A stretch of DNA of 63,379 bases, the filler included, from Octopus bimaculoides (lineage: Eukaryota): the NCBI RefSeq assembly GCF_001194135.2. It is 6 parts of 5 records of this genome, joined end to end, with 100 filler letters (N's around TTAATTAATTAA, not from the genome) between each part and the next. Parts side by side here need not be neighbours in the genome. Positions count along the whole stretch, not along the records: positions 36,848 to 51,773 come from NC_068987.1; 5 more parts are not named here. One strand, written 5' to 3'. A program made the translations under genes and the position numbers. The notes below the pieces were generated by a model that saw only the letters and a list, made by a program, of their open reading frames with translations, did no database searches and had not been told where the DNA came from. Within the stretch, counting starts at the first letter, position 1, and each line of letters opens with the position of its first letter. Below, piece after piece: positions 36,848 through 51,773 of the stretch.

Positions 36848-38409
36848 AAGGATGGAAGGCAAAGTCGACTTCGACGGAATTTGAACTCAGAACGTAAGTA
36901 CGGACAAAATGCCGCTAAGCATCTTGCCCGATATCCTAACGATTCTTCCAGTCCACCATTTTCAGTACTACTACTAATAATAATCCTTTCTATTATAGGC
37001 ACAAGGCCTGAAATTTGGGCGGGGGGGGGAGACAGTCGATTACATCAAACGGTTCTTATTTTATCGACCCCAGAAGGATGAAAGGTAAAGTTCACCTAGG
37101 CAGAATTTGACCGCTAAACATAAAAACCGGAAGAGACGCCGCTAAGTATTTTGTCTGGCGCAGTAACGACTCTTCCAACTCACTGTCTGGTTCTGTTGTA
37201 TTATGAATGATCGTAGTTCTATTTTCCTTTACTACTTTACTTCTATGACTTGAAATTCCTTTGTTTTATTGAATACTGACAATAAACGTATTTCCCTTTA
37301 ACGTATGTAGTCTTTCTTTACAGGAATCTAAAGATGGAGATTAGTCACTCAATATACGTTGATCATATAAATAGAACTGGAAGATAATCCAATGACAGCA
37401 CTGTGTGCATCATTTTGACGTTTCGTTAGTGTCCGTTTTTAACTTTCTAAAATAAGAACAAATCCAATTATTGTATAAGACTGATTCGCTTTGAGTTTGT
37501 GTCTGCTGCTTACTTTACAGAATATTGGAGGGATAATATGTAAAGTCAATTCCAGTGGGATTTGAACTCGTAACGAGAATGGACAAAAAGTAAAATTAAG
37601 TGCTACATCTTTTTTTTTTTTTTTACCTTTTCTCAATACTTTAGCATTTCGTTCTCCTTATCATCTTGACTTGGCTTTGTGATGTAACCGCTGAAAAAAT
37701 CATTAAAAGCTTACAATGTATAACAGCAACTTCGTTTCTCTTAATAGAAAAGCTTAACTCGCTTTCAAGGTAGTGAATTAGCCGAGTGGTTAGATCGTCG
37801 TATTGATTCCCTTATTATATTCGTTCTGAGTGTCTGCAATCTGAGTTCAAATTCCACCCGGGGCAACTTTGCTTTTCATTCCCTGGGAATCGATAAATAA
37901 CGTACCAGTTAAGTACTAGGGGATCAATTCTTCTTTCTCTCTAAAAGAAATCGGTTGTAATCAGAACTGAAGCGGAATGGATTCTCTCAGGTTTAAGGCG
38001 CACCACTACGACTCCATCAGGAGACGGGGACTCAGAGAAAAGGCGAGACACTAGTCCTAGTGAGAGAGGGAGGTTGTGACAGCTGTTAACTAGCAATGCT
38101 TTGCTCATTATAATTGAGTGACCCCCAAACTTTTAGAAACAACTATCCTGCTTATGCGGATCTGGTAGTCAGCTGATTTCATCGTGAAAACCTGCTGTGA
38201 CTTTCCTTTTGCAAGAAAAGGGAGCTAGTTTGGTTCTACCTTGAGACAAAGCTGATTCTGTGGTAGGCGCAATAAATGGACTGAAAGCATAGAATTTCTT
38301 CTGTCTCATCAATATTTGCAACTACAACTTGAAGAGAAAGAAGGTCAAAATGGAAGTTGCTGTTAAATTTAAATTTGCTGAAATGGGGGTGAGTGAGTTT
38401 AGAGTGGCT

Positions 38410-38735
38410 GAATAACTGGCACTGTGTCGGCTACAACGACACGAGTTCCAGTTGATCCGATCGACGGAACAGCCTGCTTGAGAAATTACCGTGCAAGTAG
38501 CTTAGCACTCACTCAACAGACAATCGAACCCTTAATGTAGTTCTCGGAGAGATTAAGCGGGACACAGAATGTGACAAGGCTGACCTTTTCAAATACAGGT
38601 GCTTCTCATTTTTGCCAGCTAAGTGGAGTGGAGTAACGAGAAATAAAATTTCTTGCTCGAGGACACAACGCACCGCTGAGAATCGAACTCACGATCTTAT
38701 GCTCACGAACCGAATGTCCTAACCACTAAGCCACG
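38410..38735 (-). mobile_element. Diverged family-A-related SINE
   Basis: Plus strand shows GTTCCAGTTGATCCGATCGACGGAACAGCCTGC and GAATCGAACTCACGATC...CCTAACCACTAAGCC, an antisense tRNA-like head. Confidence 0.7.
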
Positions 38736-40114
38736 TCTCCACGGAGTGGCTGAATAAGCATAACGCGAATCTGCAACTGTTGGTGAGAAGCAACAACAGA
38801 GAGGAGGAACTTTTTTTTTCTTTTTTTTTTTTGGTAGTCAGCGTTATTAGCATTGACCTTCATATGGGATCTCATGGTATACTTATCCCCGCGCAGGCGT
38901 GGCTGTCTAGNNNNNNNNNNNNNNNNNNNNNNNNNNNNNNNNNNNNNNNNNNNNNNNNNNNNNNNNNNNNNNNNNNNNNNNNNNNNNNNNNNNNNNNNNN
39001 NNNNNNNNNNNNNNNNNNNNNNNNNNNNNNNNNNNNNNNNNNNNNNNNNNNNNNNNNNNNNNNNNNNNNNNNNNNNNNNNNNNNNNNNNNNNNNNNNNNN
39101 NNNNNNNNNNNNNNNNNNNNNNNNNNNNNNNNNNNNNNNNNNNNNNNNNNNNNNNNNNNNNNNNNNNNNNNNNNNNNNNNNNNNNNNNNNNNNNNNNNNN
39201 NNNNNNNNNNNNNNNNNNNNNNNNNNNNNNNNNNNNNNNNNNNNNNNNNNNNNNNNNNNNNNNNNNNNNNNNNNNNNNNNNNNNNNNNNNNNNNNNNNNN
39301 NNNNNNNNNNNNNNNNNNNNNNNNNNNNNNNNNNNNNNNNNNNNNNNNNNNNNNNNNNNNNNNNNNNNNNNNNNNNNNNNNNNNNNNNNNNNNNNNNNNN
39401 NNNNNNNNNNNNNNNNNNNNNNNNNNNNNNNNNNNNNNNNNNNNNNNNNNNNNNNNNNNNNNNNNNNNNNNNNNNNNNNNNNNNNNNNNNNNNNNNNNNN
39501 NNNNNNNNNNNNNNNNNNNNNNNNNNNNNNNNNNNNNNNNNNNNNNNNNNNNNNNNNNNNNNNNNNNNNNNNNNNNNNNNNNNNNNNNNNNNNNNNNNNN
39601 NNNNNNNNNNNNNNNNNNNNNNNNNNNNNNNNNNNNNGGGAGGCGGTACAGAAAGAGGAGGCATTGGGAGAAAGGCAGTGGACTGAGGGACGTTATGAAT
39701 TTATAATATTATTATAGTATTGTTTGCAAATTATATAATATTATATTAAATATCAAATGATTCATTGTATATATAAATTATTAAAATATAAAATATCTAT
39801 TTATACATAAAAATAACGGTGGGGGCGCTGAGGGTATTATGTGGCCATGAGGGGGGCGGTGGTCGAAAATGTTTGAGAACCACTGATCTAAAGCAAAATG
39901 TTTTTCAGGAGCTTTTAAAATATTATTGTGGATCCCTAATTTACTATTTTCGTGAATGGACCCTGGTTGAGAAACCCTGTACTAGTCAAATATTAATGTC
40001 CTTTTAATTGACTGATCCCCGCTGCCCACAAAAACCATCATTATCATTATTATTATTCAATTCGGATAAAGCTTCATAGTAAACAAAGTCACTTTTGTTT
40101 ACACCGCCTCCTCC

Positions 40115-40220
40115 ATCTTCTTCTTCTCCTTCTTCTTCTTCTTCTTCTTCTTCTTCTTCTTCTTCTTCTTCTTCTTCTTCTTCTTCTTCTTCTTCTTCTT
40201 CTTCTTCTTCTTCTTCTTCT
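40115..40220. repeat. (CTT)n microsatellite
   Basis: Directly visible. Confidence 0.95.
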
Positions 40221-40437
40221 GTCCCCTTCTTTATTGTAGTAGTGAATAAGGAAACAGACAATGTCCTTTCTTTTTTTTTCTTTTTTCTTTTTCTTCTAAA
40301 ATTACTACAATTGACACACTGTTCTTTTCTGTCTTGCTTTTCTTAATGGCCATTAAAGATAGGTTGGTCTCGTTGTATAGAGACTGTGAACTAGATCTAT
40401 GAATTAGTACATTGTTGGAGTCTTCTGATCAGCTGAG

Positions 40438-40476
<39 letters not shown>

Positions 40477-40610
40477 TTGTGTGAAAGAGAGAGTCATAGA
40501 GAGGGGGAGGGAGCAATAGGCTGGTACATACTCAGACACATTCATACAAGTACATTTATACACACAGTTTACATATACACACGCACACGTACACACATGT
40601 ATATAGCAAA

Positions 40611-40642
<32 letters not shown>

Positions 40643-40729
40643 ATGTGCGCTTGCGTCCGTATATTGAGTATGTTTGCTTTACCAGATGTAATTGAAGGTA
40701 CTTATTGTATAAGTATGTTCCTGCGTTGT

Positions 40730-41100
40730 GGAGGCGCAATGGCCCAGTGGTTAGGGCAGCGGACTTGCGGTCGTAGGATTGCGGTTTCGAGTGAGTGTTT
40801 ATTGAGCGAAAACACCTAAAGCTCCACGAGGCTCCGGCAGGGGGTGGTGGTGAACCCTGCTGTAGTACTCTTTCACCACAACTTTCTCTCACTCTTTCTT
40901 CCAGTTTATGTTGTACCTGTAATTTAAAGGGCCAGCCTTGTTACACTCTGTGTCACGCTGAATATCCCCGAGAACAACGTTAAGGGTACACGTGTCTGTG
41001 CAGTGCTCAGCCACTTGCACGTTAATTTAACGAGCAGGCTGTTCCGTTGATCGGATCAACTGGAACCCTCGACGTCGTAAGCGACGGAGTGCCAACAACA
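40730..41100 (+). mobile_element. tRNA-derived SINE, family A
   Basis: Head GGAGGCGCAATGGCCCAGTGGTTAGGGCAGCGGAC, body GTCACGCTGAATATCCCCGAGAAC...GATCGGATCAACTGGAACCCTCGACGTCG, and an (AAC)n tail. Confidence 0.85.
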
Positions 41101-41280
41101 TGTTCCTGCGTGNNNNNNNNNNNNNNNNNNNNNNNNNNNNNNNNNNNNNNNNNNNNNNNNNNNNNNNNNNNNNNNNNNNNNNNNNNNNNNNNNNNNNNNN
41201 NNNNNNNNNNNNNNNNNNNNNNNNNNNNNNNNNNNNNNNNNNGTTATATTCGTGTTTTCTGTCTTACAAACGCCTGAAAA

Positions 41281-41315
<35 letters not shown>

Positions 41316-41344
41316 CGCGCTTGTAGACTTTTATTTTATTCTTT

Positions 41345-41505
41345 TGCTTGTTTCAGTCATTTGACGGCCATGCCGGAGCACCGTCTTGAAGGGTTTTAGT
41401 CGAACAAATCGACCGCAAAACTTATTCTTTGTAAGCCTAGTGCTTATTCTATCGTTCTCTTTTGCCGAACGGCTGGCTTACGGGTACGTAAACATACCAA
41501 CACCG
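41345..41505 (+). mobile_element. Interspersed repeat, family E (also about 57775-57960 +, 54950-55110 -, 990-1130 +)
   Basis: TTGTTTCAGTCATTTGAC..GCCATGCxGGAGCACCG...TATTCTATCG...GCCGAACxGCT....ACGGG.ACGTAAAC. Confidence 0.75.
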
Positions 41506-41800
41506 TATGTACGTTTGTTTTCTCTCTTCAAAATCATTATGTCAGGGCTCTTGTGTTTACATTTTATTGAGGTTTTCACTGGGACATTCCACCAGTATTT
41601 CTTTTTATTATGAGTGGCTCCTACTGTGTGTGGGTTCCTATTTCTTTGTCGTCGGGGTTATCTTTCCGACGGATCTTATTGTACAGTGTCCTAGCTACAA
41701 CATCATGTCTCATCGGTAGATAATACCGTGATGAGATTTTCAGACTTCTGCAATTATAAACAGGGCAAATTTTAACCATTTCTCCGCAGACTGAAAAAAT
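41500..41800 (-). mobile_element. Fragment of an RLE-type non-LTR retrotransposon (R4/Dong-like zinc-knuckle region)
   Basis: Minus ORF VCGEMV...SSRYYLPMRHDVVARTLYNKI resembles the CxxC...Y..RHD.VA motif that precedes the restriction-like endonuclease. Confidence 0.6.
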
Positions 41801-41806
41801 TATGGA

Positions 41807-41853
41807 CAACTTTAATCGATTTTCGAACCTTATTGGGTTCTCATCAGAGGCGT
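41807..41853 (-). ncRNA. Minimal type I hammerhead ribozyme motif (PLE-type)
   Basis: Minus strand: CGCCT CTGATGA GAACC caataa GGTTC GAAA ATCGAT TA | AAGTTG. The core is intact, stem II is 5 bp and helix III is the palindrome AATCGATT. Stem I is weak. Confidence 0.7.
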
Positions 41854-41975
41854 GTATGTATGTATGTATGTATGTATGTATGTATGCATGTATGTATGTA
41901 TGTATGTATGTATGCATGCATGTATGTATGTATGTATGTATGTATGTATGTATGTATGTATGTATGTATATATGT

Positions 41976-42402
41976 ATAGGATCCCTAAGCAGATGCTATA
42001 TGGAGAACTTATGAATGGAAGGAGATTCCGGCAGAAACCAAGGCTGCGCTCTAAGGACTGTGTCAAGTCCTCATTAAAGGCCTGTGATATGCCGGACACT
42101 GACTGGGAGAACAATGCCTGTCATCGCCACAGATGGAGGAAGCAGGTTAAGGAAGAGATCGACACTTTTGAGAGAGCACGTATCCAGCATGAAGAACTTA
42201 AGCGAGCTGCGCGAAAGCGCACGGCTCGTATAGTGAATGGGGAAAGCTTGGTCTGCACTGTTTGCAGTTGTGTATGCTTGTCAAGAGCAGGGCTCATTAG
42301 CCACAAACGGAGCCGCAAATGCAAAATATAAGTTAGTCCTAGAGCGCACAATGATCCTGTATGTCGGCAATGGTCTTCCTCGGTCACGAGTGGACGGCCA
42401 TC
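41976..42402 (+). mobile_element. 3' end of a second RTE-type LINE (C-terminal C2H2 finger) embedded in (TATG)n
   Basis: RIPKQMLYGEL...RQKPRLRSKDCVKSSLK...WRKQV...CTVCSCVCLSRAGLISHKRS. (TATG)n lies on both sides (41853-41975, 42403-42427). Confidence 0.85.
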
Positions 42403-43114
42403 ATGTATGTATGTATGTATGTATGTACGTTTGGACGCTCGACAGTATGTCTATGTTTGTATGAATGAAAGCGTAGAAGCATGGTTATCATTACACATGT
42501 GGATCTGAGTGCATTGATTTATGTAATATGTGTTTATACGTTTTTACACGTGTGTATATGTAGCAATACCAGGTTAAACTTCTGGAATGTTTTACGTTTC
42601 CACAGTTCCATTAAGCGTTTGTGATTGCAATTTTTTAATTAACCATATCCCATCAGGTTTTGTTGATACTCAACTTCACAAGATTAGTGTTGAGGTTGAT
42701 AGTTATATAACCACGACCTCCAATCACTGGCTCTAATCTAGTTATAATATGGTTGTAATATCCAGGCATATCTCGTTAGTTTGATGTAGAAGTTTTCTTT
42801 TATTATTTTAATCTTGTACTAACGTGTGCTGGGCAACCGATTTCTTTCTATTATGCACAGCGTCTCTTCTCTGTCTTAGATTGTCTGTTCTGTTATATTT
42901 GCATTTTAGAAGTTTGGCAGAAACATTCCGCTGGTTTTATTAAGCATAGCTGTATATAAGTATGGGGATGTCTCGCTTTGAAGCCACGAAGTTTCAGGTT
43001 CAGTCCCACAGAGCCGCACTTTGGGCTAATGTCTTCTAACTTCGACCTTGGGTCGACTAAAGCTTGTGAATGAATTTGATAGATAGAAACTATACGTGAA
43101 TGAATTTGACAGAC

Positions 43115-43156
<42 letters not shown>

Positions 43157-44251
43157 CTGTCTGTCTGCCCGCATCACCAATCCCTCACCGCGTTTGTTTA
43201 CGTCATCGTGACCTAACTATACGTCATCGTCATCTAGCCATTCGGCAAAAGAGACTGGTAAAGTATGTACCAGACTTTTAGAAATACTAAGTATGGCCGC
43301 AGTTCAATGACTGAAGCAAGTAAAAGATAAAAGATATGTGACTATACTTTCTACATTAATGTGGCATCGTACATTTTTGTTTTCGGCACTAGCCGTTCTA
43401 TGGATTATATTGTATTATCTTCTCGTCACGGCATCATGCTATACCGGCAGATAGAATCGTATTTGAAGAGCGGTTTATTATGTGAGGATGTGATTTAACA
43501 TTTTGACGATAAATCAACAAAGCTTGCATCACATGTCACATCTAGAAGTTTTACTTGCATTCCTAATTCTTTTATAACTCAAGTATTTCATTGTTATTTC
43601 TTGTTCTGAGGTCGCTAAAGCATAACTTTCAAAATGAGAGTTAGCATAGTGGCTGTTGATTCGAGCTTGACTTCTGTAATAATGTATGTTACTGTTTACT
43701 TTGTAGTTTTCTGACGACAAAATGGTTTCAAATTTTGGCACGAGGCCAGCAGTTTCAAGGGGAAGAGCTAGTCAATTACATCGTCACAGGTACTTGACTG
43801 GTACTTTGTTTTATTGACACTGAAAGGTGAAAGGCAAAATTGCCCCTCGGCAGTATTTGAACTCAGAAGGTAAAGAGCCGGAAGAAATGTCGTTAAGCGT
43901 TTTATCCAACGCGCTAATAATTTCGCCAACTCGCCACCTATATAACCCATCTTGCCATCCATACATAACATGCTGATTAGTAAAAAGCTTTTCATCCGAT
44001 GTGTTGTGGCTGTGTGATACAACTTCCCTACGTACGAATTCCGGGTCATCAGCCAAGGAAAACGTTCGCGAGAACTTCTTTCCAACTCTCGCGATGTCAT
44101 CTGCCTTATTTATGTAGATTCGATCGATGGATGTGCTTTAAAACTTATCGTTAGTAACTGTTAACGAAGAGATATGATGTGGCACTGGAAGGATGATTGA
44201 ATCGACGCTAAGGCTTTGCATCTTTTGTTATTACTATCGATAGGCAAGAGT

Positions 44252-44638
44252 GGAGGCGCAATGGCCCAGTGGTTAGGGCAGCGGACTCGCGGTCATAGGA
44301 TCGCGGTTTCGATTCTCAGACCGGGCGTTGTGAGTGTTTATTGAGCGAAAACATCTAAAGCTCCACGAGGCTCCGACAGGGGATGATGGCGAACCCTGCT
44401 GTATTCTTTCACCACAACTTTCTCTCACTCTTACTTCCTGTTTCTCTTGTACCTGTAATTCAAACGGTCAGCCTTGTCACACTGTGTCACGCTGAATATC
44501 CCCGAGAACTACGTTAAGGGTACACGTGTCTGTGGAGTGCTCAGCCACTTGCTCATTAATTTAACGAGCAGGCTGTTCCGTTGATCGGATCAACTGGAAC
44601 CCTCGACGTCGTAAGCGACGGAGTGCCAACAACAACAA
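44252..44638 (+). mobile_element. tRNA-derived SINE, family A (full length)
   Basis: A box TGGCCCAGTGG, B-box-like GTTTCGATTC, the same body as 40730, and an (AAC)n tail. Confidence 0.9.
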
Positions 44639-44828
44639 ACGATAGGCAAATATCTGGTGGTGGTTAATGACTTTCTGGTTCTTAACATCAATTGCTCGAA
44701 TCTCATTTAGCGTCCAGTCGTAAAACCAAAATGTTGGTATAAGAATTCGTATAATAAACTAATGTTTAGTACAAAAGAATATAATTTTTCATTTGAGTAT
44801 TATATTCCTTGGTAATGCGTTTTGTGTT

Positions 44829-45275
44829 TGTTGTGTCGACGCCCCCAGGCAAAGACGTAGGATCTCCCAAGACATATAAATAGAGGAAGTCTGGCCGTGG
44901 TAGGAGTGTTGAGTAGCAGTCGAGTAGCAGTTATGTAGCGGTTGAGTAGAGATCATCCGAAGGTGCTAGATAGCAGTAGCTTGAGACATAACAGTGGCGA
45001 CGAGGATGAGTTTCAAATTCACACCTCCGTGATTACGCGTCGCGGTGCTCTAGACCGATTAAGCTAAACTGCCCCACTGTTATGTCTCCGATTAAGCTAA
45101 ACTGCCCCACTGTTATGTCTCCACGCTACTGCTATCTAGCACCTTCGGATGATCTCTACTCAACCGCTACATAACTGCTACTCGACTGCTACTCAACACC
45201 CTTACCACGGCCAGACCACCTCTATTTATATGTTTCGGGAGATCCTACTTCTTCGCCTGGGGATGTCGCACAACA
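44829..45275. mobile_element. Inverted-LTR element: LTR(+) 44829-44993, PBS, tRNA-like insert, LTR(-) 45111-45275, with 5-bp TSD
   Basis: Two 165-bp arms, each TGTTGTG...ATAACA, in inverted orientation. TATAAATA at 44875. PBS TGGCGACGAGGATG at 44995-45008. GTGTT at both 44824-44828 and 45276-45280. Confidence 0.85.
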
Positions 45276-46522
45276 GTGTTATAAGTCCTATCCCTAGATT
45301 CCGGCAACATTCTTCACCAGATATCGGAGAAATAGCTTGGCCATTGATAGAGATGTTTCTCACTGGCTTATAATTACCCCTCGTTTTACAACCGAGATGT
45401 CTAAGATCGAACTTTATTTCTATATCCTCTGAGAGTGTCCCAACGAGGTCAAAGTGCGTTTTCGTATCGTTCATATTTTTGGCATATATTTTCAGGACAA
45501 CCACAAAGAAACTACGTGTCAGGCTGGTGTTTCTGTTTTCCTGCGAGTTAAATACGTACTCTGAAGATTAAGGATAAAGTGTTCACAACAAGTAGAATCA
45601 GCGTCACACGCACGCGCACACACACTTAGACACACACACAGACACACAAAGAAGAAGAAGAGATCGTCTCCTTGAAATACATCCTGAGAGGATATTTTAT
45701 CCTAACAGGAACAATATGCAATTCAATGACCTCCTGTATTTAATTTCAAGATGATTACCCAACACGCTCTGATTATCGTACCTTCCATTCAAGTTGAAGG
45801 ATCTCTAAGCATTAAGGAGTGGAGCGATAGTGCCAAGAGTGTTCTTGTAATCCAGCCCTCCGCAGCTAAACGTTTCCAATGCCGACGAACCGCTCAAACC
45901 ATAGTTTTGTTTAATAGATCAAATTGCCCAATACATTCTCAAACTTCATATTGTTTCTTAAGCTGCTTGTTCAGTTGTGGAGATAGTATTACTATCAGAA
46001 TTATGATCCAGAAGGAATAGTTCTGGATGTACTGCGTACATTTTATGCATTAATTTATGACAAATTCTAAACCATGTGAATGATTTTTTTTCCGGTATCA
46101 GATTTGTATTTTTGACAATAACAAAAACTTGCTATATTTATATCTCCATTGACAGAAAGCTGGTAAAGATCAATAAAATACCCTCAATAGAAGGTCACGT
46201 TTTTTTTTATTGAATAGACGACAATTGAGGCCCTTTCATGCCCTGTTTTATCCTGATCCTCTCCTATCACAGTGTGAAGAATATCGCCATTGATATACTT
46301 ATGCTTGTGATGCAATGCAGGGACAACACTACTTCTAACCAGACTGCATTTTCACAAAATTCTTTTTCCCTCTCCCAAAACTTTCTCTCAGAATGAATCC
46401 ATAACTTCCTGGGAAATATCCTTTATGACCTTCATTGATTGCCCTCTCTTTTCACTCTACAATGCTCATTGATTTTGATTGAAATTCTTCATGTAGTTCT
46501 CTTGCTTTACTACATTTCTGAG

Positions 46523-46554
<32 letters not shown>

Positions 46555-46949
46555 TGTATGCATGCTTGCATGGATGGATGGATGGTTGGATGGATGGACG
46601 TATGAACGGATGGATGCTTGCATACGAAATACAAGTGTATGAATATGTGCTTCAAAGGGAAACATTTCCATCACTGTGTTTGTACATATTAGTTAGACAG
46701 TTAGTAAATTGGTTGGTTGGTGGATTTGTTGGTCGGCTGGCTGACTGGCTGGCTGGTTGGCTGGCTGATTGGTTGGTTGGTTGGTTGGTTAGTTGGTTGG
46801 TTTAGTCTGATTTAGTTTGGTTTGGTTTAGATTGGTTTGGTTTGGTTTGGTTGGTTAGCTAATTGGGAAAATATTAAAGAAGCTTGGTGACATAATACAT
46901 CATTGTGTAGCTTCAACAATTACTCGAAACCAATCAGCAAGGTCTCTAG

Positions 46950-48183
46950 GGTGTACTTGCACATTGTGTACATGTGTTTTTATAACTGACACAATCTTTT
47001 GATGATCTCGTATTTACAACAACACCTTCCGTAGCGCTTTCCGTTATATTGTATCGAAAACTAATTTAAAAGTAATGAAATGAAAATGCAGTGGAATTTT
47101 ATGTCTCTCTGGCTTTTCTGATTCTTGACAGGCAATAAAGACTGCATCAATTGTTCTTCTTCCTGGTCTAAAAACCACATTGCGTTTCGCTTAAGCTTCT
47201 TATGGTTATTGGTGCACATCTGCTTAGTAGAATCTCATAAAATACTTTTCCAGGAATTGAAAGTAATATTATTTTCTGGATTCAATTTATTTCCTTCCTT
47301 ATGGATGAGGTTCGCTATCATTATTGACCAGTCTGTAGGGAGACTTTTTCTTTTATAATGATTTGATTAAACAATTTTTATGTCTTTATCATTAATAGTA
47401 CTACTTTGTTTTGATTGCTATTGTATGTGTGCTGCCCATACCTGGCGTATCTTGATCTTTCCCATTTTCTGTTTTAAACTATTTAATAGCATTTTCGACT
47501 TATTTATTTTAGTAATTGGTAAGAAGTTTCCTATGCCATAATCAATGTTATTTGGTCTATCTCGCATTAAGTTTCATCTTTATCGAAGAATTGTGTACTG
47601 AAATGCTTTTCAAAATGCATTCATCATCTGTTTAATGCATTGCTTGTTTCACTTGTAGCATTTCTTGCGAGTTTTTTACTACTTTTACTACCAACACCAT
47701 TTCGTGATTTTCCCTCCTTCCAGTTGTCTGCTTTGCTGAAATAGCCAATATGTATTTATTTCTTCAGAAAGAGTTCTTCTACTTGTATTTTTAGTTATTA
47801 GATTTTTATTCTTCTGTTGTCTCAAGTATTTTTTGATTTTTGTTTAATTCTTTATATAATTCTATTTCTGAAATCGGTGTTATGTTGAAAGGCAATCATA
47901 TGCGATTTCGCTAACTTTCGTTTTTATCACACATATCTACAGCGTCTGCCGATAGAACTTCCATTTGTCTGTCGGTGTTTCTTGATGCCAAATTCTTCTC
48001 TTGCTATCTAATGCACAGTATTTTTTTGATTGCATGAAAAAATTCTCCGAAAATTCTCCGTACCATCTTGGTCTGAAAACGCATCTAATCGACATACAAC
48101 TAAGATTTCAAATTTCTGTGATGGATATGTGCTTATGTGTGTGCTTGTGTGCGTGTGTGTGTGTGTGTACGTCTGTGTGTGCT

Positions 48184-48219
<36 letters not shown>

Positions 48220-49280
48220 TGTGTGTTTGTGTGCTTGTGTGTGTGTGTATGTGTGTGCGTGTGTGTATGTTGTGTGCGCGCGCATGTGTGTGTATATGTG
48301 TGTGTGCGCGTGTGCGTGTGTGTGTGTGTGTGTTTGTGTCTAGGTGAATGTGTGTACATAGTTTCTCTAAAATGCAGCATTTTAAAAAGATCTCGTGTAT
48401 GTTCGATGTCGTACTTTTGATAGAATGTTAATGTTTGCCATTTCTAGCGAATAATGAGACCCTATTTCTGCAGAACTATGTTCTACAGTTTTTCAGGTGG
48501 GATTTCCATCACCTTGGCAATTAATTTGCAATCTATCTGACTTTTCTTTCGTCCGTCTGCTGAAATCCATATATAAACGCTTTCACTCGTTGCGTGTGAA
48601 TATACAATTAGAGAAAATGAGATTATTAATTGTACAAAATTGCAGAAGATTTAATTTTCTTTCATTATGAATTCCAATTCTATATTTTCGCATAACTCGT
48701 GTCCAGTTTTCATTCTTATCATTTCCAATTACAGCATTAAAATCTCCCATTATAAGAAATTCTTCATTTGGTGGAAGATAATTTATTACTTCTTGAAAGT
48801 TGTCAAAGAATTCTTGTGAATAATGAATGCCATAGCTGGAGTTTGGTACATACACTAGAAATATAATTATTCTTAATTTGAGGAGATCTCAAGTGTAATC
48901 TTCAATAACAATATATTATACGTTACTAGATTGTTTAAGAATAGTGAAATACTCGGTCTTTATGTGACATCGGTTCAGGAAGAATTTATTATTACCTGAA
49001 CGGAAAATAGGTGGAAGTACACAGAAGGAAAGGTGTATGGGGTGGGGCACTTGTAGAGCTTTGTCTCCTCTTCTTTCCAATCTCATTCTCATGTACATTA
49101 GCGAACTCCAAGTTCCAAAGAACCCAGTTCCATCGCTAATTTTTACATAATCACTCCTTCTTCCACAATGGTAGGTCTTTGTGTGGCCCAGAATGTTTTT
49201 CTTATTCCTATTCCCTCAATGTCAAATTTGTCAGTCATCCTCCACCGGTTGAATAAGCCGTCAGTCGAAAATAAAAGGCC
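46950..49280 (-). mobile_element. Old APE-RT LINE fragment (RTE/L2-like), split by a (TG)n tract
   Basis: Minus ORF 48583-48855 reads FLIMGDFNAVIG...GIHNERKLNLLQFCTINNLIFSNCIF (APE). The 47000-47350 minus strand has remnants HKEGNKLNPEN, FRPGRRTIDAVF and VFDTI (RT). Confidence 0.75.
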
Positions 49281-49289
49281 CAAGCAGGC

Positions 49290-49686
49290 CATGTAACGAC
49301 ACACGTGTTTTTCTCCGACTATCTGCTCCTTTCCCCCTTTTTCTCCTCTCTGAACTTTTTCCTCTTTCCGACGACGGAGAGCCATGTTCGAAACGTCAAT
49401 ACTACTTTTTCGTCAAAACCAACAGTTGAATATATTGACTGTGTTCGTCCAACTGACTTTTGTTGTTTTTTCGTGTTCTTGTTTTTGATTTGCCTATGTA
49501 TATATATCGTTGGCAATTTCATTCCTCGTCTTCTCTTCTTTTGGACTTTACTCTGTTTCCAAAGAAGAGCGTCTGCTCGAAACGTTAAACCAGCTTTCTT
49601 TCCTTTCCTGAGCGTCTGCTAATACATTACATGTACCACGTCCTCGCGTTGTTGTTGTTTTTTTGTGTTTGTTCTTTTGGGGATTT
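49290..49686 (+). repeat. Repeat with two tandem degenerate hammerhead-like motifs (probable PLE terminal repeat)
   Basis: CCGACGA..GAGCcatGTTC GAAACGTC at 49368-49397 and CCAAAGA A GAGCgtctGCTC GAAACGTT at 49559-49586. Confidence 0.45.
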
Positions 49687-50560
49687 NNNNNNNNNNNNNN
49701 NNNNNNNNNNNNNNNNNNNNNNNNNNNNNNNNNNNNNNNNNNNNNNNNNNNNNNNNNNNNNNNNNNNNNNNNNNNNNNNNNNNNNNNNNNNNNNNNNNNN
49801 NNNNNNNNNNNNNNNNNNNNNNNNNNNNNNNNNNNNNNNNNNNNNNNNNNNNNNNNNNNNNNNNNNNNNNNNNNNNNNNNNNNNNNNNNNNNNNNNNNNN
49901 NNNNNNNNNNNNNNNNNNNNNNNNNNNNNNNNNNNNNNNNNNNNNNNNNNNNNNNNNNNNNNNNNNNNNNNNNNNNNNNNNNNNNNNNNNNNNNNNNNNN
50001 NNNNNNNNNNNNNNNNNNNNNNNNNNNNNNNNNNNNNNNNNNNNNNNNNNNNNNNNNNNNNNNNNNNNNNNNNNNNNNNNNNNNNNNNNNNNNNNNNNNN
50101 NNNNNNNNNNNNNNNNNNNNNNNNNNNNNNNNNNNNNNNNNNNNNNNNNNNNNNNNNNNNNNNNNNNNNNNNNNNNNNNNNNNNNNNNNNNNNNNNNNNN
50201 NNNNNNNNNNNNNNNNNNNNNNNNNNNNNNNNNNNNNNNNNNNNNNNNNNNNNNNNNNNNNNNNNNGAGAAATAGTTTGATGAAATTCTATTTAACAATA
50301 GCAAAATTCTAATGCCAAGGCAAATTGTTTCGTAACTTAAAAACATGTAAATTAGAATTTCCTCGTCTAACTATTTCTCTGCCATTTATGACTTTATACA
50401 CTTCTTATCGTTTTCTCTTGTATCATACCATATATTCTATACGTTTTGTAGGATCATACATCAAGGAGTTTTTTTAGTTTTTTTTTTAGTATTATTGGAT
50501 TACTTAAATCCACACAGACACACACACACACACAGACACACACACACATACGCACACACA

Positions 50561-50662
<102 letters not shown>

Positions 50663-50684
50663 TACATATATATATATATATGTC

Positions 50685-50716
<32 letters not shown>

Positions 50717-50723
50717 TACATAC

Positions 50724-50774
<51 letters not shown>

Positions 50775-51174
50775 GTATATTTATATGCATATGTACATAC
50801 ATATATGTGCATAACTACATATATATGTATGTGTGTGTGTGTGTGTGTGTGTTTGTGTGTGTGTGCGTGTGTACTCGCGTACAGAGATATTTAACACACT
50901 CGAGTGTATTAGGACCTGAGAGGAACTTTCGCTTCAGAAATAGTCCAGAATAGTCCAGAATAGTCCAGGAGAAAAGTTCCCTCCTAGACAACTGTAGAAA
51001 CATATACTGAGCTGTGGATGACGTCAGACAGTCAAACCAACACACAAAAAAAAGAGAGATATTTGCGCATGTATATTACGACATACACAAGAATGTGTTT
51101 ATGTATGTAGATTTAGGCATATGCTGCCTCTTATAAGATGAAAAAAGCTACTGCCAGCCGCAACAAAGCACACG

Positions 51175-51209
<35 letters not shown>

Positions 51210-51293
51210 AAGCTCACACACGTACACATACATTTGTACATACAAAGCAAAGAAATAAGAGAGATTAAAGGAAAGAAAGGAAGGGTGGAAGGA

Positions 51294-51395
51294 TGAAGAA
51301 GAAGAAGAAAAAGAAGAAGAAGAAGAAGAAGAAGAAGAAGAAGAAGAAGAAGAAGAAGAAGAAGAAGAAGAAGAAGAAGAAGAAGAAGAAGAAGA
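51294..51395. repeat. (GAA)n microsatellite
   Basis: Directly visible. Confidence 0.95.
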
Positions 51396-51773
51396 AGGGT
51401 GGAGGAGGAGGAAGATAAGGAGGTGGTGCAGAACAACTGCAACAATAAGAACAACAAGAATTTATGAACTAAATGAATGTTTGCCCTGAATCCGCCCACG
51501 ACATTCAACTCTCCAAGTTTCTATTTCAAATTCGGTTATCTCTTGTCTGCTCACTTCGCCACCACCTGCTGACATAAGGGTATGAAGGGTATGTGTATGT
51601 GGGTGGTATGTGCGGGTGTGTGTGTGCATGTCTGTGTGTGGGGTATAAATGTATATATGGAGAAATGTATGTAGGCATGTACGTAGGTATGTAGCTATGT
51701 ATGAATACATGCACATATAAATGTTAGTATCTATATATGTATGTGTGTGCATATATATATATATATATATATA

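What the first reader, a model, noticed from the sequence alone, without database searches (positions are those of the whole stretch)
44824..45280. Inverted-LTR element with two U3 ends and a 5-bp target-site duplication
Seen: a 165-bp TGTTGTG...ATAACA unit at 44829-44993 is repeated in inverted orientation at 45275-45111. The whole 447 bp is flanked by the direct repeat GTGTT (44824-44828 and 45276-45280). The left unit has a TATA-like TATAAATA and is followed after one base by TGGCGACGAGGATG. Known: that 14-mer is the complement of the 3' end of metazoan tRNA-Ser(GCU) (...CATCCTCGTCG-CCA), a Gypsy-type primer-binding site. LTR integrases join TG...CA ends and create 4-6-bp TSDs, and normal LTRs are direct repeats. 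Inference: this is an LTR-derived foldback unit integrated as one piece with two U3 ends. It may be a one-off snap-back cDNA or a family of integrase-mobilised 'inverted TRIMs'. Either strand would transcribe into a ~165-bp hairpin.
Basis: partly seen in the sequence, partly recalled or inferred. Interest (0 to 1): 0.8.

Follow-up and report, generated by a model that had tools for sequence, protein, structure and literature searches.

The report
Head-to-head retrotransposon LTR pair
A 447-bp insertion in an animal genome consists of two copies of a short Gypsy-type retrotransposon LTR facing each other across a tRNA-shaped spacer; it is most likely a dead by-product of faulty reverse transcription that the element's integrase still inserted, and would matter only if it proves to be a multi-copy family.

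Summary
Arms 44829-44997 and 45107-45275 are inverted copies with 13 differences in 170 aligned columns. They end TGTTGTG...CATAACA and are flanked by an exact 5-bp direct repeat, GTGTT. A 14-nt perfect complement of the tRNA-Ser(GCU) 3' end follows the left arm after one base.

LTR origin is now supported by data. The same U5-end/spacer/PBS string sits at the 5' end of gag-pol elements with Ty3/Gypsy domain order in unrelated metagenome contigs, and one of them (L009) also shares the leader just after the PBS.

- Both arms carry the LTR plus G plus TGG.
- There is a perfect 33-bp tandem duplication at the inner right junction.
- The 79-nt centre has a cloverleaf layout. Its 3' part is tRNA-Ser-like and its 5' part is class-I-tRNA-like, but both detections are sub-threshold.
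- Arm differences cluster in the outer, U3 half.

Best reading (confidence 0.5): a head-to-head LTR dimer was made before integration and inserted through two U3 ends. It cannot retrotranspose.

Rivals are a Ginger-like DNA-mobilised family, a post-insertion rearrangement and an assembly artefact. Interest is moderate.

The parts
44824..44828 (.). Left copy of the 5-bp target-site duplication, GTGTT
   Evidence: Sequence. It is a direct repeat of 45276-45280, not an inverted one, and the adjacent bases do not extend it.
44829..44993 (+). Left LTR (165 bp), TGTTGTG...CATAACA, with its U3 end outward
   Evidence: The terminal 7-mers are 6/7 inverted repeats. The U5 end AGACATAACA is shared with Gypsy loci L003, L009 and L010.
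44875..44882 (+). TATA-like TATAAATA in the left LTR, position 47 of the LTR
   Evidence: It is conserved at the same position in the right arm.
44994..44994 (+). 1-nt spacer (G) between U5 and the PBS
   Evidence: The same G spacer is present in all Gypsy-type loci carrying the motif.
44995..45026 (+). Primer-binding site: 14 nt exactly complementary to the tRNA-Ser(GCU) 3' end (44995-45008), followed by a diverged extension into the T-arm complement
   Evidence: 25/32 identical to the tRNA-Ser(GCT) primer of PMC9072684. Beyond the first 14 nt, 11/18 match (p = 0.0012). L009 has the same extension.
44995..45073 (-). 79-nt tRNA-shaped centre, read on the minus strand and ending ...CCTCGTCGCCA. 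It is a chimera: the 3' 32 nt are tRNA-Ser-like and the 5' 47 nt are class-I-tRNA-like. It is not a functional tRNA.
   Evidence: Rfam tRNA model 15.6 bits, below the 29-bit gathering score (E 0.83 over 4227 families), minus strand 45066..45006. ARAGORN is negative even at 70% thresholds. Alignment to real tRNAs gives Thr z 4.5 and Cys z 3.9; Ser-GCT gives z -0.1 for the 5' part; reverse-complement controls are flat.
45055..45120 (.). Perfect 33-bp tandem duplication (2 copies). It spans the 5' 19 nt of the tRNA-like segment, CCA, C, and the inner 10 nt of the right LTR.
   Evidence: the repeat finder D1, 100% identity. Perfect identity against about 7.6% arm divergence suggests a later slippage event (inference).
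45107..45110 (-). CCAC, the reverse complement of G+TGG: the right arm also carries the spacer and the first 3 nt of the PBS
   Evidence: The alignment of the arms extends through GAGACATAACAGTGG on both sides ([I5, I6], 7).
45111..45275 (-). Right LTR (165 bp) in inverted orientation, with its U3 end outward
45223..45230 (-). TATA-like TATAAATA of the right LTR, on the minus strand
45276..45280 (.). Right copy of the 5-bp target-site duplication, GTGTT

Best explanation
The element is a dead, non-autonomous derivative of a Ty3/Gypsy-type LTR retrotransposon that primes on tRNA-Ser(GCU).

Structure: two complete short LTRs (165 bp each, each carrying the spacer G and the first TGG of the PBS) lie head to head. 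Their U5/PBS ends face inward and their U3 ends face outward. A 79-nt segment plus a later 33-bp slippage duplication separates them.

Inferred origin: the dimer formed before integration, as an aberrant reverse-transcription product. A plus-strand strong-stop-type DNA (U3-R-U5-G-PBS plus extension) continued into the primer/leader region. It was then joined, by template switching or end joining at the TGG/CCA microhomology, to a second LTR+G+TGG unit in the opposite orientation. This gave a linear duplex with a U3 terminus (TGTTGTG) at each end.

Inferred insertion: LTR termini are near-identical inverted repeats (TGTTGTG versus TGTTATG), so the element's integrase could use two U3 ends, and it made the usual 5-bp staggered cut (GTGTT).

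Consequences: with no PPT, no 3' R in the right orientation and no genes, the insert cannot retrotranspose. It persists as a long inverted repeat whose two TATA-bearing LTRs point at each other.

Shown: LTR identity, PBS, inverted arrangement, TSD, and the absence of a PPT and of genes. Inferred: how the dimer formed, and that integrase inserted it.
For: - Inverted arms of 169 nt with 13 differences in 170 aligned columns (about 92% identity), and an exact 5-bp direct repeat at both U3 termini.
- The PBS is exact for 14 nt against a published tRNA-Ser(GCT) primer.
- A metagenome scan for the 19-mer CATAACAGTGGCGACGAGG returned 13 loci. Eight of them are 5' ends of LTR retroelements, with gag starting 20-130 nt downstream.
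- The L003 polyprotein has the order gag-RVT_1-RNaseH-Integrase_H2C2-rve. L002 has RNaseH then integrase. L009 has gag, protease and RVT_1.
- L009 shares 41 nt spanning the U5 end, PBS and leader at 85% identity, plus ATAGCAGTAG in U5, and appears to have TGTTATG...CATAACA termini.
- L002's LTR is about 197 bp, so short LTRs are normal in this group.
- Both arms retain G+TGG beyond the CA. Integrase trims such bases, so the inner junctions come from copying or joining, not from integration.
- There is no purine run of 9 or more, and no gag/pol similarity in the piece.
- The right arm is followed by GTGTT+ATAAG, not by the reverse complement of the left flank. This argues against a host-replication inverted duplication.
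- Thirteen arm differences and an asymmetric centre argue against a fold-back assembly chimera, which would be a perfect palindrome.
Against: - Only one copy was available, and no empty site, second copy or full-length partner could be examined.
- A simple snap-back predicts identical arms that then decay evenly. Instead, 11 of 13 differences lie in the outer 77 nt, with a 75-nt identical run (permutation p 0.005). This needs two non-identical templates, arm-to-arm correction, or constraint.
- The centre is not the complement of tRNA-Ser(GCU) beyond about 32 nt, so plain read-through of the primer does not explain it.
- The first 30 nt of the centre can be ordinary leader, since L009 has the same feature.
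- The TSD rests on five bases, and the attempt to confirm it through homologues of the interrupted flank failed.
- Finding a unique accident in a random window is less likely a priori than meeting a member of a repeat family.
Confidence: 0.5

Rival explanations
1. The element is one member of a multi-copy family of non-autonomous elements with inverted LTR-derived arms. These would be moved as DNA by an integrase-type DDE enzyme: a Gypsy integrase acting on excised or extrachromosomal copies, or a Ginger-like transposase. In effect it would be an LTR-derived MITE.
For: - The termini TGTTG fit the TGTNR pattern shared by Gypsy LTRs and Ginger TIRs.
- The arm length of 165-169 bp lies within the 40-270 bp range of Ginger TIRs.
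- A short TSD is present. TDD-4 and TDD-5 make 5-bp TSDs. A 252-bp non-autonomous Ginger2 is known (PMC2836005; PMC6839031).
- Arm differences of about 7.6% alongside an intact TSD are easy to explain if the differences were inherited from a master copy.
- A priori, a repeat met in a random window is more likely to belong to a family.
Against: - The inner 41 nt are homologous to the U5-PBS-leader of bona fide Gypsy retroelements, so the arms are LTRs, not ordinary TIRs.
- Metazoan Ginger1 targets CCGG/CCGT with 4-bp TSDs, and metazoan Ginger2 makes 4-bp TSDs in RTATAY. Neither fits GTGTT.
- The outer part of the arms, where a transposase would bind, is the least conserved apart from the last 7 nt.
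- There is no second copy in the 15-kb piece and none in any collection searched. The host genome was not among those collections, so this is weak evidence.
Confidence: 0.22
2. An ordinary LTR element (full-length, TRIM-like or solo) inserted here and made the GTGTT duplication. It was later rearranged in place, by inverted duplication of the 5' LTR, by inversion, or by a nested second insertion followed by deletions.
For: - The region is a nest of decayed repeats with microsatellites and a nearby SINE-like copy.
- A later local rearrangement did occur: the perfect 33-bp tandem duplication.
- Non-uniform arm divergence could reflect two different source copies.
Against: - The breakpoints would have to fall exactly at the U3 terminus next to the TSD.
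- They would also have to reproduce G+TGG at the inner end of the right arm. The chance of those 4 nt arising alone is about 1/256.
- A replication template switch would have copied on into the reverse complement of the left flank, which is not seen.
- A nested insertion would carry its own TSD. CCCAC versus GTGTT do not match.
Confidence: 0.12
3. The structure is an assembly artefact: a fold-back chimera, or a mis-join of two LTR copies in a scaffolded draft assembly.
For: - The piece has three N gaps (727, 130 and 580 bp), so it is a scaffolded draft.
- Inverted repeats and a perfect 33-bp tandem repeat are places where graph assemblers can err.
Against: - Fold-back chimeras give perfect palindromes. 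Here the arms differ at 13 positions and the centre is unique and asymmetric.
- The flanks are different unique sequences that share exactly the 5-bp repeat.
- No N gap lies within 3 kb of the element.
Confidence: 0.05
4. The element is a non-autonomous DIRS-type (tyrosine-recombinase) retroelement, a group that naturally has inverted terminal repeats.
For: It has inverted long terminal repeats. The DIRS literature was located (PMC7192593, PMC5633606).
Against: - The centre has no internal complementary region matching the outer arm ends. Local scores are at shuffle level.
- A TSD is present, whereas DIRS elements make none (general knowledge).
- A tRNA PBS and homology to Gypsy U5/leader are present.
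Confidence: 0.02

Closest known systems
Ty3/Gypsy (Metaviridae) LTR retrotransposons with a tRNA-Ser(GCU) primer-binding site
   Same: TG...CA LTR with short terminal inverted repeats; a TATA-bearing short LTR; a 1-nt spacer; a PBS exact for 14 nt; U5-end/PBS/leader homologous to elements with gag-PR-RT-RNaseH-INT; a 5-bp TSD.
   Different: The two LTRs are inverted, not direct. There is no PPT and there are no genes. The insert cannot complete the strand transfers of reverse transcription.
TRIM / SMART-type miniature LTR retrotransposons
   Same: Tiny size (447 bp), short LTRs, a PBS, non-autonomous.
   Different: TRIMs have direct LTRs and a PPT and are replicated through RNA. Neither feature is present here.
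Ginger1, Ginger2/TDD and GingerRoot integrase-related DNA transposons and their non-autonomous derivatives (PMC2836005, PMC6839031)
   Same: TIR architecture with TGTNR termini; TIR length in range; a short TSD; presumed insertion by an integrase-type DDE enzyme.
   Different: The arms are demonstrably LTR-plus-PBS sequence. The TSD length and target do not match metazoan Ginger1 or Ginger2. No transposase partner or further copies could be examined.
Mini-donor DNAs with two identical LTR ends, used in concerted retroviral integration assays in vitro (my own knowledge, not checked here)
   Same: A short linear duplex with the same LTR terminus at both ends, inserted with the virus-specific TSD.
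   Different: Those are laboratory constructs. This would be a natural genomic instance.
Strong-stop DNA with attached primer tRNA, proposed as the source of tRNA-derived SINEs (Ohshima and Okada model, recalled from memory; not found in the searchable library)
   Same: Read on the minus strand, the locus has a tRNA-like segment whose CCA end abuts the complement of U5-R-U3.
   Different: The tRNA-like segment is sub-threshold and chimeric. A second LTR is attached to its 5' side. There is no A/T-rich or LINE-type tail.

Membership tests
Ty3/Gypsy LTR retrotransposon (LTR-derived sequence) | LTR bounded by TG...CA with short terminal inverted repeats | tested here: met
   TGTTGTG...CATAACA, 6/7 inverted, in both arms.
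Ty3/Gypsy LTR retrotransposon (LTR-derived sequence) | PBS complementary to a tRNA 3' end within a few nt of the 5' LTR | tested here: met
   14/14 to the tRNA-Ser(GCT) complement after a 1-nt spacer, and 25/32 overall.
Ty3/Gypsy LTR retrotransposon (LTR-derived sequence) | Homology to elements encoding gag and pol in the order PR-RT-RNaseH-INT | tested here: met
   Only the U5 end, PBS and leader (41 nt, 85%) are homologous to L009. The motif is shared with L001, L002, L003, L005, L010, L011 and L013.
Ty3/Gypsy LTR retrotransposon (complete or solo element) | Two LTRs in direct orientation (or one solo LTR) with a PPT before the 3' LTR | tested here: not met
   The LTRs are inverted, and there is no purine run of 9 nt or more anywhere in the element.
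Ty3/Gypsy LTR retrotransposon (complete or solo element) | 4-6-bp target-site duplication | tested here: met
   GTGTT on both sides, exactly 5 bp. Confirmation through an empty-site proxy failed.
TRIM | Direct terminal repeats enclosing a PBS and a PPT | tested here: not met
   The repeats are inverted and there is no PPT.
Ginger1 / Ginger2-TDD non-autonomous DNA transposon | TIRs of about 40-270 bp beginning TGTNR | tested here: met
   169-nt arms beginning TGTTG. Criteria are from PMC2836005.
Ginger1 / Ginger2-TDD non-autonomous DNA transposon | Family-specific TSD: 4-bp CCGG/CCGT (Ginger1); 4 bp in RTATAY (metazoan Ginger2); 5 bp in TDD-4/5 | tested here: not met
   The TSD is the 5-bp GTGTT. 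The length fits only the Dictyostelium TDD elements, and the target motif fits neither group.
Ginger1 / Ginger2-TDD non-autonomous DNA transposon | Shares its TIRs with an autonomous element that encodes the transposase, and has multiple copies with different TSDs | not testable with these tools
   The host genome is not in any searchable collection.
DIRS | Internal complementary region matching the outer ends of the inverted repeats, and no TSD | tested here: not met
   Local alignment of the outer 40 nt against the centre is at shuffle level. A TSD is present.
tRNA gene / tRNA-derived SINE head | Detected as a tRNA by a covariance model or ARAGORN, with a paired acceptor stem and a 7-nt anticodon loop | tested here: not met
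   Rfam tRNA scores 15.6 bits against the 29-bit gathering score, over positions 8-63 only. ARAGORN finds none even at 70% thresholds. The anticodon loop is 9 nt and only 4 of 7 acceptor pairs form (sequence).

The most novel reading that the evidence does not exclude
The locus is one copy of a family in which two Gypsy LTR ends in inverted orientation are moved as DNA by an integrase-type enzyme. That would make it a living or fossil intermediate between LTR retrotransposons and Ginger-type cut-and-paste transposons. Its tRNA-shaped centre would then be a remnant of the strong-stop-DNA/primer-tRNA intermediate from which the founder arose.
Probability: 0.15. Interest if true: 0.85.

Novelty: new variant of a known kind. 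Interest (0 to 1): 0.5.

Why it matters
If it is a one-off, it is a natural record that an LTR-retrotransposon integrase can insert a DNA with two U3 ends and make a normal TSD. It would also show that reverse transcription sometimes yields head-to-head LTR dimers. This is useful to annotators: LTR finders expect direct repeats and TIR finders would call this a MITE. It also creates a long inverted repeat with two promoters pointing at each other, a plausible source of double-stranded RNA.

If it is a family, it bears on an open question raised in PMC2836005: how integrase-encoding DNA transposons (Ginger) and LTR retrotransposons are related. It would show LTR ends working as TIRs.

The tRNA-shaped chimeric centre, if real, would be physical evidence that primer tRNA can be copied into integrated DNA.

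Tried and rejected
1. Other copies via proteins. The outward ORFs in the arms (MISTQPLHNCYSTATQH...) were used as handles. Exact look-ups of four window ORFs found nothing. A profile search of the two arm ORFs found no candidates.
2. Other copies via DNA. Arm-core patterns gave no hit in viral contigs, metagenome contigs or GTDB genomes. The U5/PBS 19-mer gave no hit in viral contigs. tRNA-like D-arm patterns gave no hit in viral contigs or GTDB genomes.
3. Empty-site proxy. Removing the element plus one GTGTT keeps one minus-strand frame continuous. That frame has no homologues. The exhaustive search gave only a spurious repetitive bacterial protein. There was no Pfam match. The idea that the flank is a LINE remnant therefore rests only on motifs I recognise, and the test failed.
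4. Host identification. The only homologue of the intact ORF at 41852-42331 is 45% identical and lies on a metagenome contig with no DNA similarity to the piece.
5. Centre as a read-through copy of tRNA-Ser(GCU). Rejected for the 5' 47 nt (z = -0.1). For the first 30 nt the evidence is weakened, because the intact relative L009 has the same T-arm complement in its leader.
6. Centre as a real tRNA. Rejected.
7. DIRS. Rejected.
8. Autointegration. Disfavoured: integrase-made joints would have lost G+TGG, and the product is a circle, not a host insertion (reasoning from established retroviral biochemistry).
9. The Rfam miRNA hits elsewhere in the piece are microsatellite artefacts far below gathering scores.
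10. Literature searches for inverted LTRs with a TSD, LTRs in inverted orientation and the strong-stop-DNA SINE model returned nothing usable. A search on inverted LTRs with hairpins returned only DIRS papers.
Full report
CONTEXT. The piece (36848-51773) is draft animal genomic DNA. It has three N gaps, abundant TG/TA/ATGT microsatellites, and three copies of a SINE-like repeat with a tRNA-like head: 40728-41100 and 44250-44634 at 89% identity, and 38417-38600 inverted. It also has decayed retroelement-like frames and no bacterial-type gene content. ARAGORN finds no tRNA gene. All Rfam hits are sub-threshold miRNA models lying on microsatellites.

OBSERVATION.
- The arms align over 169 nt each (44829-44997 and 45107-45275) with 11 substitutions and 2 single-base indels.
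- The LTR proper is 165 bp, TGTTGTG...CATAACA.
- GTGTT flanks both outer ends as a direct repeat of exactly 5 bp.
- TATAAATA sits at position 47 of each arm.
- TGGCGACGAGGATG follows the left arm after one G.
- The 447 nt fold at -321.6 kcal/mol, z = -29.
- There is no other copy in the piece.

- Both arms carry G+TGG beyond the LTR. GAGACATAACAGTGG occurs once forward and twice reversed (I5 and I6).
- There is a perfect 33-bp tandem duplication at 45055-45120 (D1).
- The arm differences are not evenly spread.

ARE THE ARMS LTRs? Yes.
- A paper lists the primer complementary to the human tRNA-Ser(GCT) 3' end as TGGCGACGAGGATGGGATTCGAACCCACGCGT (PMC9072684). The window matches the first 14 nt exactly and 25/32 overall. 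The full tRNA sequence in PMC10359600 confirms the assignment.
- A metagenome scan for the 19-mer across the U5 end, spacer and PBS gave 13 loci. Eight of them (L001, L002, L003, L005, L009, L010, L011, L013) read ...ACATAACA-G-TGGCGACGAGG(AT), followed within 20-130 nt by a gag-like start.
- Of the other five, L004 and L007 look like chance matches in bacterial-type coding sequence. L006 and L012 carry the motif without recognisable gag-pol. L008 was not classified.
- L003 encodes a 1571-aa polyprotein with Retrotrans_gag, RVT_1, RT_RNaseH, Integrase_H2C2 and rve in that order. L002 has RNaseH then integrase. L009 has gag (weak), aspartyl protease and RVT_1. This is the Ty3/Gypsy order.
- L009 is the nearest relative. 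It shares 41 nt across the U5 end, PBS and leader at 85% identity, plus ATAGCAGTAG further up in U5, and its LTR seems to run TGTTATG...CATAACA over about 227 bp.
- L002's LTR is about 197 bp. A 165-bp LTR is therefore unremarkable for this group.

WHAT IT IS NOT.
- Not an ordinary LTR element or a TRIM: the repeats are inverted, there is no purine tract of 9 nt or more, and there is no gag/pol similarity.
- Not DIRS: nothing in the centre is complementary to the outer arm ends, and a TSD is present.
- Not a tRNA gene.
- Ginger-type integrase transposons share the TGTNR termini, the TIR length and a short TSD (PMC2836005; PMC6839031). But the arms are demonstrably LTR-plus-PBS, and the TSD does not fit metazoan Ginger1 or Ginger2.

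THE CENTRE. After collapsing the 33-bp duplication, 82 nt lie between the two LTR+G units, running from TGG to CCA. Read on the minus strand, the first 79 nt fall into exact cloverleaf register (7-2-4-10-4-1-5-9-5-4-5-7-5-7-1-CCA) with U8, A14, G18G19, A21, T54T55, R57 and A58 in place. However, the anticodon loop is 9 nt and the acceptor stem does not pair.
- The Rfam tRNA model gives 15.6 bits, below the 29-bit gathering score, over model positions 8-63. ARAGORN finds nothing even at 70% thresholds.
- The 3' 32 nt are a diverged copy of tRNA-Ser(GCU). Beyond the first 14 nt, 11 of 18 match (p = 0.0012), and 5 of the 7 mismatches are transitions.
- The 5' 47 nt are unlike tRNA-Ser (z = -0.1). 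They resemble class-I tRNAs with the TAGCTCAG..GGT.TAGAGCA D-arm: Thr z 4.5, Cys z 3.9, each p about 0.002 among 13 tRNAs tested. Reverse-complement controls are flat.
- L009, an intact relative, also has the T-arm complement (TTCGAACTCAC) after its PBS. The first 30 nt can therefore be inherited leader, an extended PBS.
- The class-I-like 47 nt remain unexplained.
- One speculative reading: plus-strand synthesis ran into the primer tRNA and switched to a second tRNA near the T-stem/variable-loop boundary. In human tRNA-Ser(GCT), the RT-blocking m3C47d lies 36 nt from the 3' end (PMC9072684). I rate this as a lead, not a finding.

HOW IT MOST LIKELY AROSE.
- Integrase trims the bases beyond the terminal CA. 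Both inner ends keep G+TGG, so they were made by copying or joining, not by integration. This also disfavours autointegration.
- A host-replication inverted duplication would have copied on into the reverse complement of the left flank, but the right arm is followed by GTGTT+ATAAG.
- A nested second insertion would have its own TSD, and CCCAC versus GTGTT do not match.
- The most economical account is a linear head-to-head dimer of LTR+PBS units formed during or just after reverse transcription, by template switching or end joining at the TGG/CCA microhomology. It would have been inserted by integrase through two U3 ends, which differ from the U5 end by one base in seven.
- The perfect 33-bp duplication is probably a later slippage. 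Perfect identity over 33 bp has only about a 9% chance at the arms' divergence.

WHAT DOES NOT FIT. Eleven of the 13 arm differences lie in the outer 77 nt, and there is a 75-nt identical run (permutation p = 0.005). Possible explanations are two different templates (U3 is the variable part of LTR families), arm-to-arm correction near the hairpin centre, or constraint. The data cannot choose between them.

ASSEMBLY ARTEFACT. Unlikely. The arms differ at 13 positions, the centre is asymmetric and no N gap is near. Only long reads can settle it.

LIMITS.
- Four exact ORF look-ups failed.
- A profile search with the arm ORFs found nothing.
- Six DNA pattern scans aimed at further copies found nothing.
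- A search with the interrupted flank found nothing, and the exhaustive search gave one spurious hit.
- The only homologue of any ORF in the piece comes from an unrelated contig.
The key questions therefore remain open: copy number, a full-length partner, and an empty site.

VERDICT. LTR and PBS origin is now supported by data. Integration as one piece with two U3 ends is the best reading but is inferred. A one-off aberrant cDNA (0.5) is favoured over a DNA-mobilised family (0.22), an in-place rearrangement (0.12), an artefact (0.05) and DIRS (0.02). It is a new variant of a known kind, of moderate interest. Interest would be high only if genome-wide searches reveal a family.

Noticed in passing
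window 45055-45120: A perfect 33-bp tandem duplication (CCGATTAAGCTAAACTGCCCCACTGTTATGTCT x2) straddles the junction between the centre and the right LTR. It has 2-nt microhomology (CC) at its borders. It is probably a later slippage event or, less likely, an assembler loop.
   Followed up: partly
window 40728-41100, 44250-44634 and 38417-38600: Three copies of a SINE-like repeat with a tRNA-like head and a (CAA)n tail. Two are direct at 89% identity and one is inverted at 79%. One copy ends 190 bp upstream of the element.
   Followed up: partly
window 41852-42331 (+): An intact 159-aa ORF with a microsatellite-encoded N-terminus (MYVC repeats) and a C-terminus resembling the tail of a retroelement protein. 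The only homologue (P0002, 45% identity) is on a 1.3-Mb eukaryote-like contig of an ENA metagenome assembly.
   Followed up: partly
window 45281-47600, minus strand: Frame-shifted fragments with reverse-transcriptase-like motifs recognised by eye (PTDWS..IHKEGNK, FRPGRRTIDAVF, F.TFKLVFDTI, QGDDL). They suggest the element sits in a decayed non-LTR retrotransposon. Pfam and homology searches were negative.
   Followed up: partly
window 40440-40650, 41856-41977, 50590-50890, 51660-51773: Numerous sub-threshold Rfam miRNA hits (mir-297, mir-3149, mir-466, mir-1277). All lie on TG/TA/ATGT microsatellites and are composition artefacts.
   Followed up: yes
L001, L002, L003, L005, L009, L010, L011, L013 (metagenome contigs): The U5-end/spacer/PBS string ACATAACA-G-TGGCGACGAGG(AT) is conserved across Ty3/Gypsy elements from unrelated metagenomes whose LTR bodies are otherwise dissimilar. 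L009 additionally carries a T-arm complement (TTCGAACTCAC) after a 2-nt offset, which suggests an extended or bipartite PBS in this lineage.
   Followed up: partly
L006 6360-6378 and L012 1617-1635: Two near-identical contigs carry the same 19-mer, but the downstream ORFs show no recognisable gag-pol. Their nature is unknown.
   Followed up: no
window 44789-44956 (-) and 45149-45373 (+): Each arm contains the same outward-facing ORF (MISTQPLHNCYSTATQH...), 55 and 74 aa long, running from the LTR into the flank. It has no homologues and is most likely fortuitous.
   Followed up: yes
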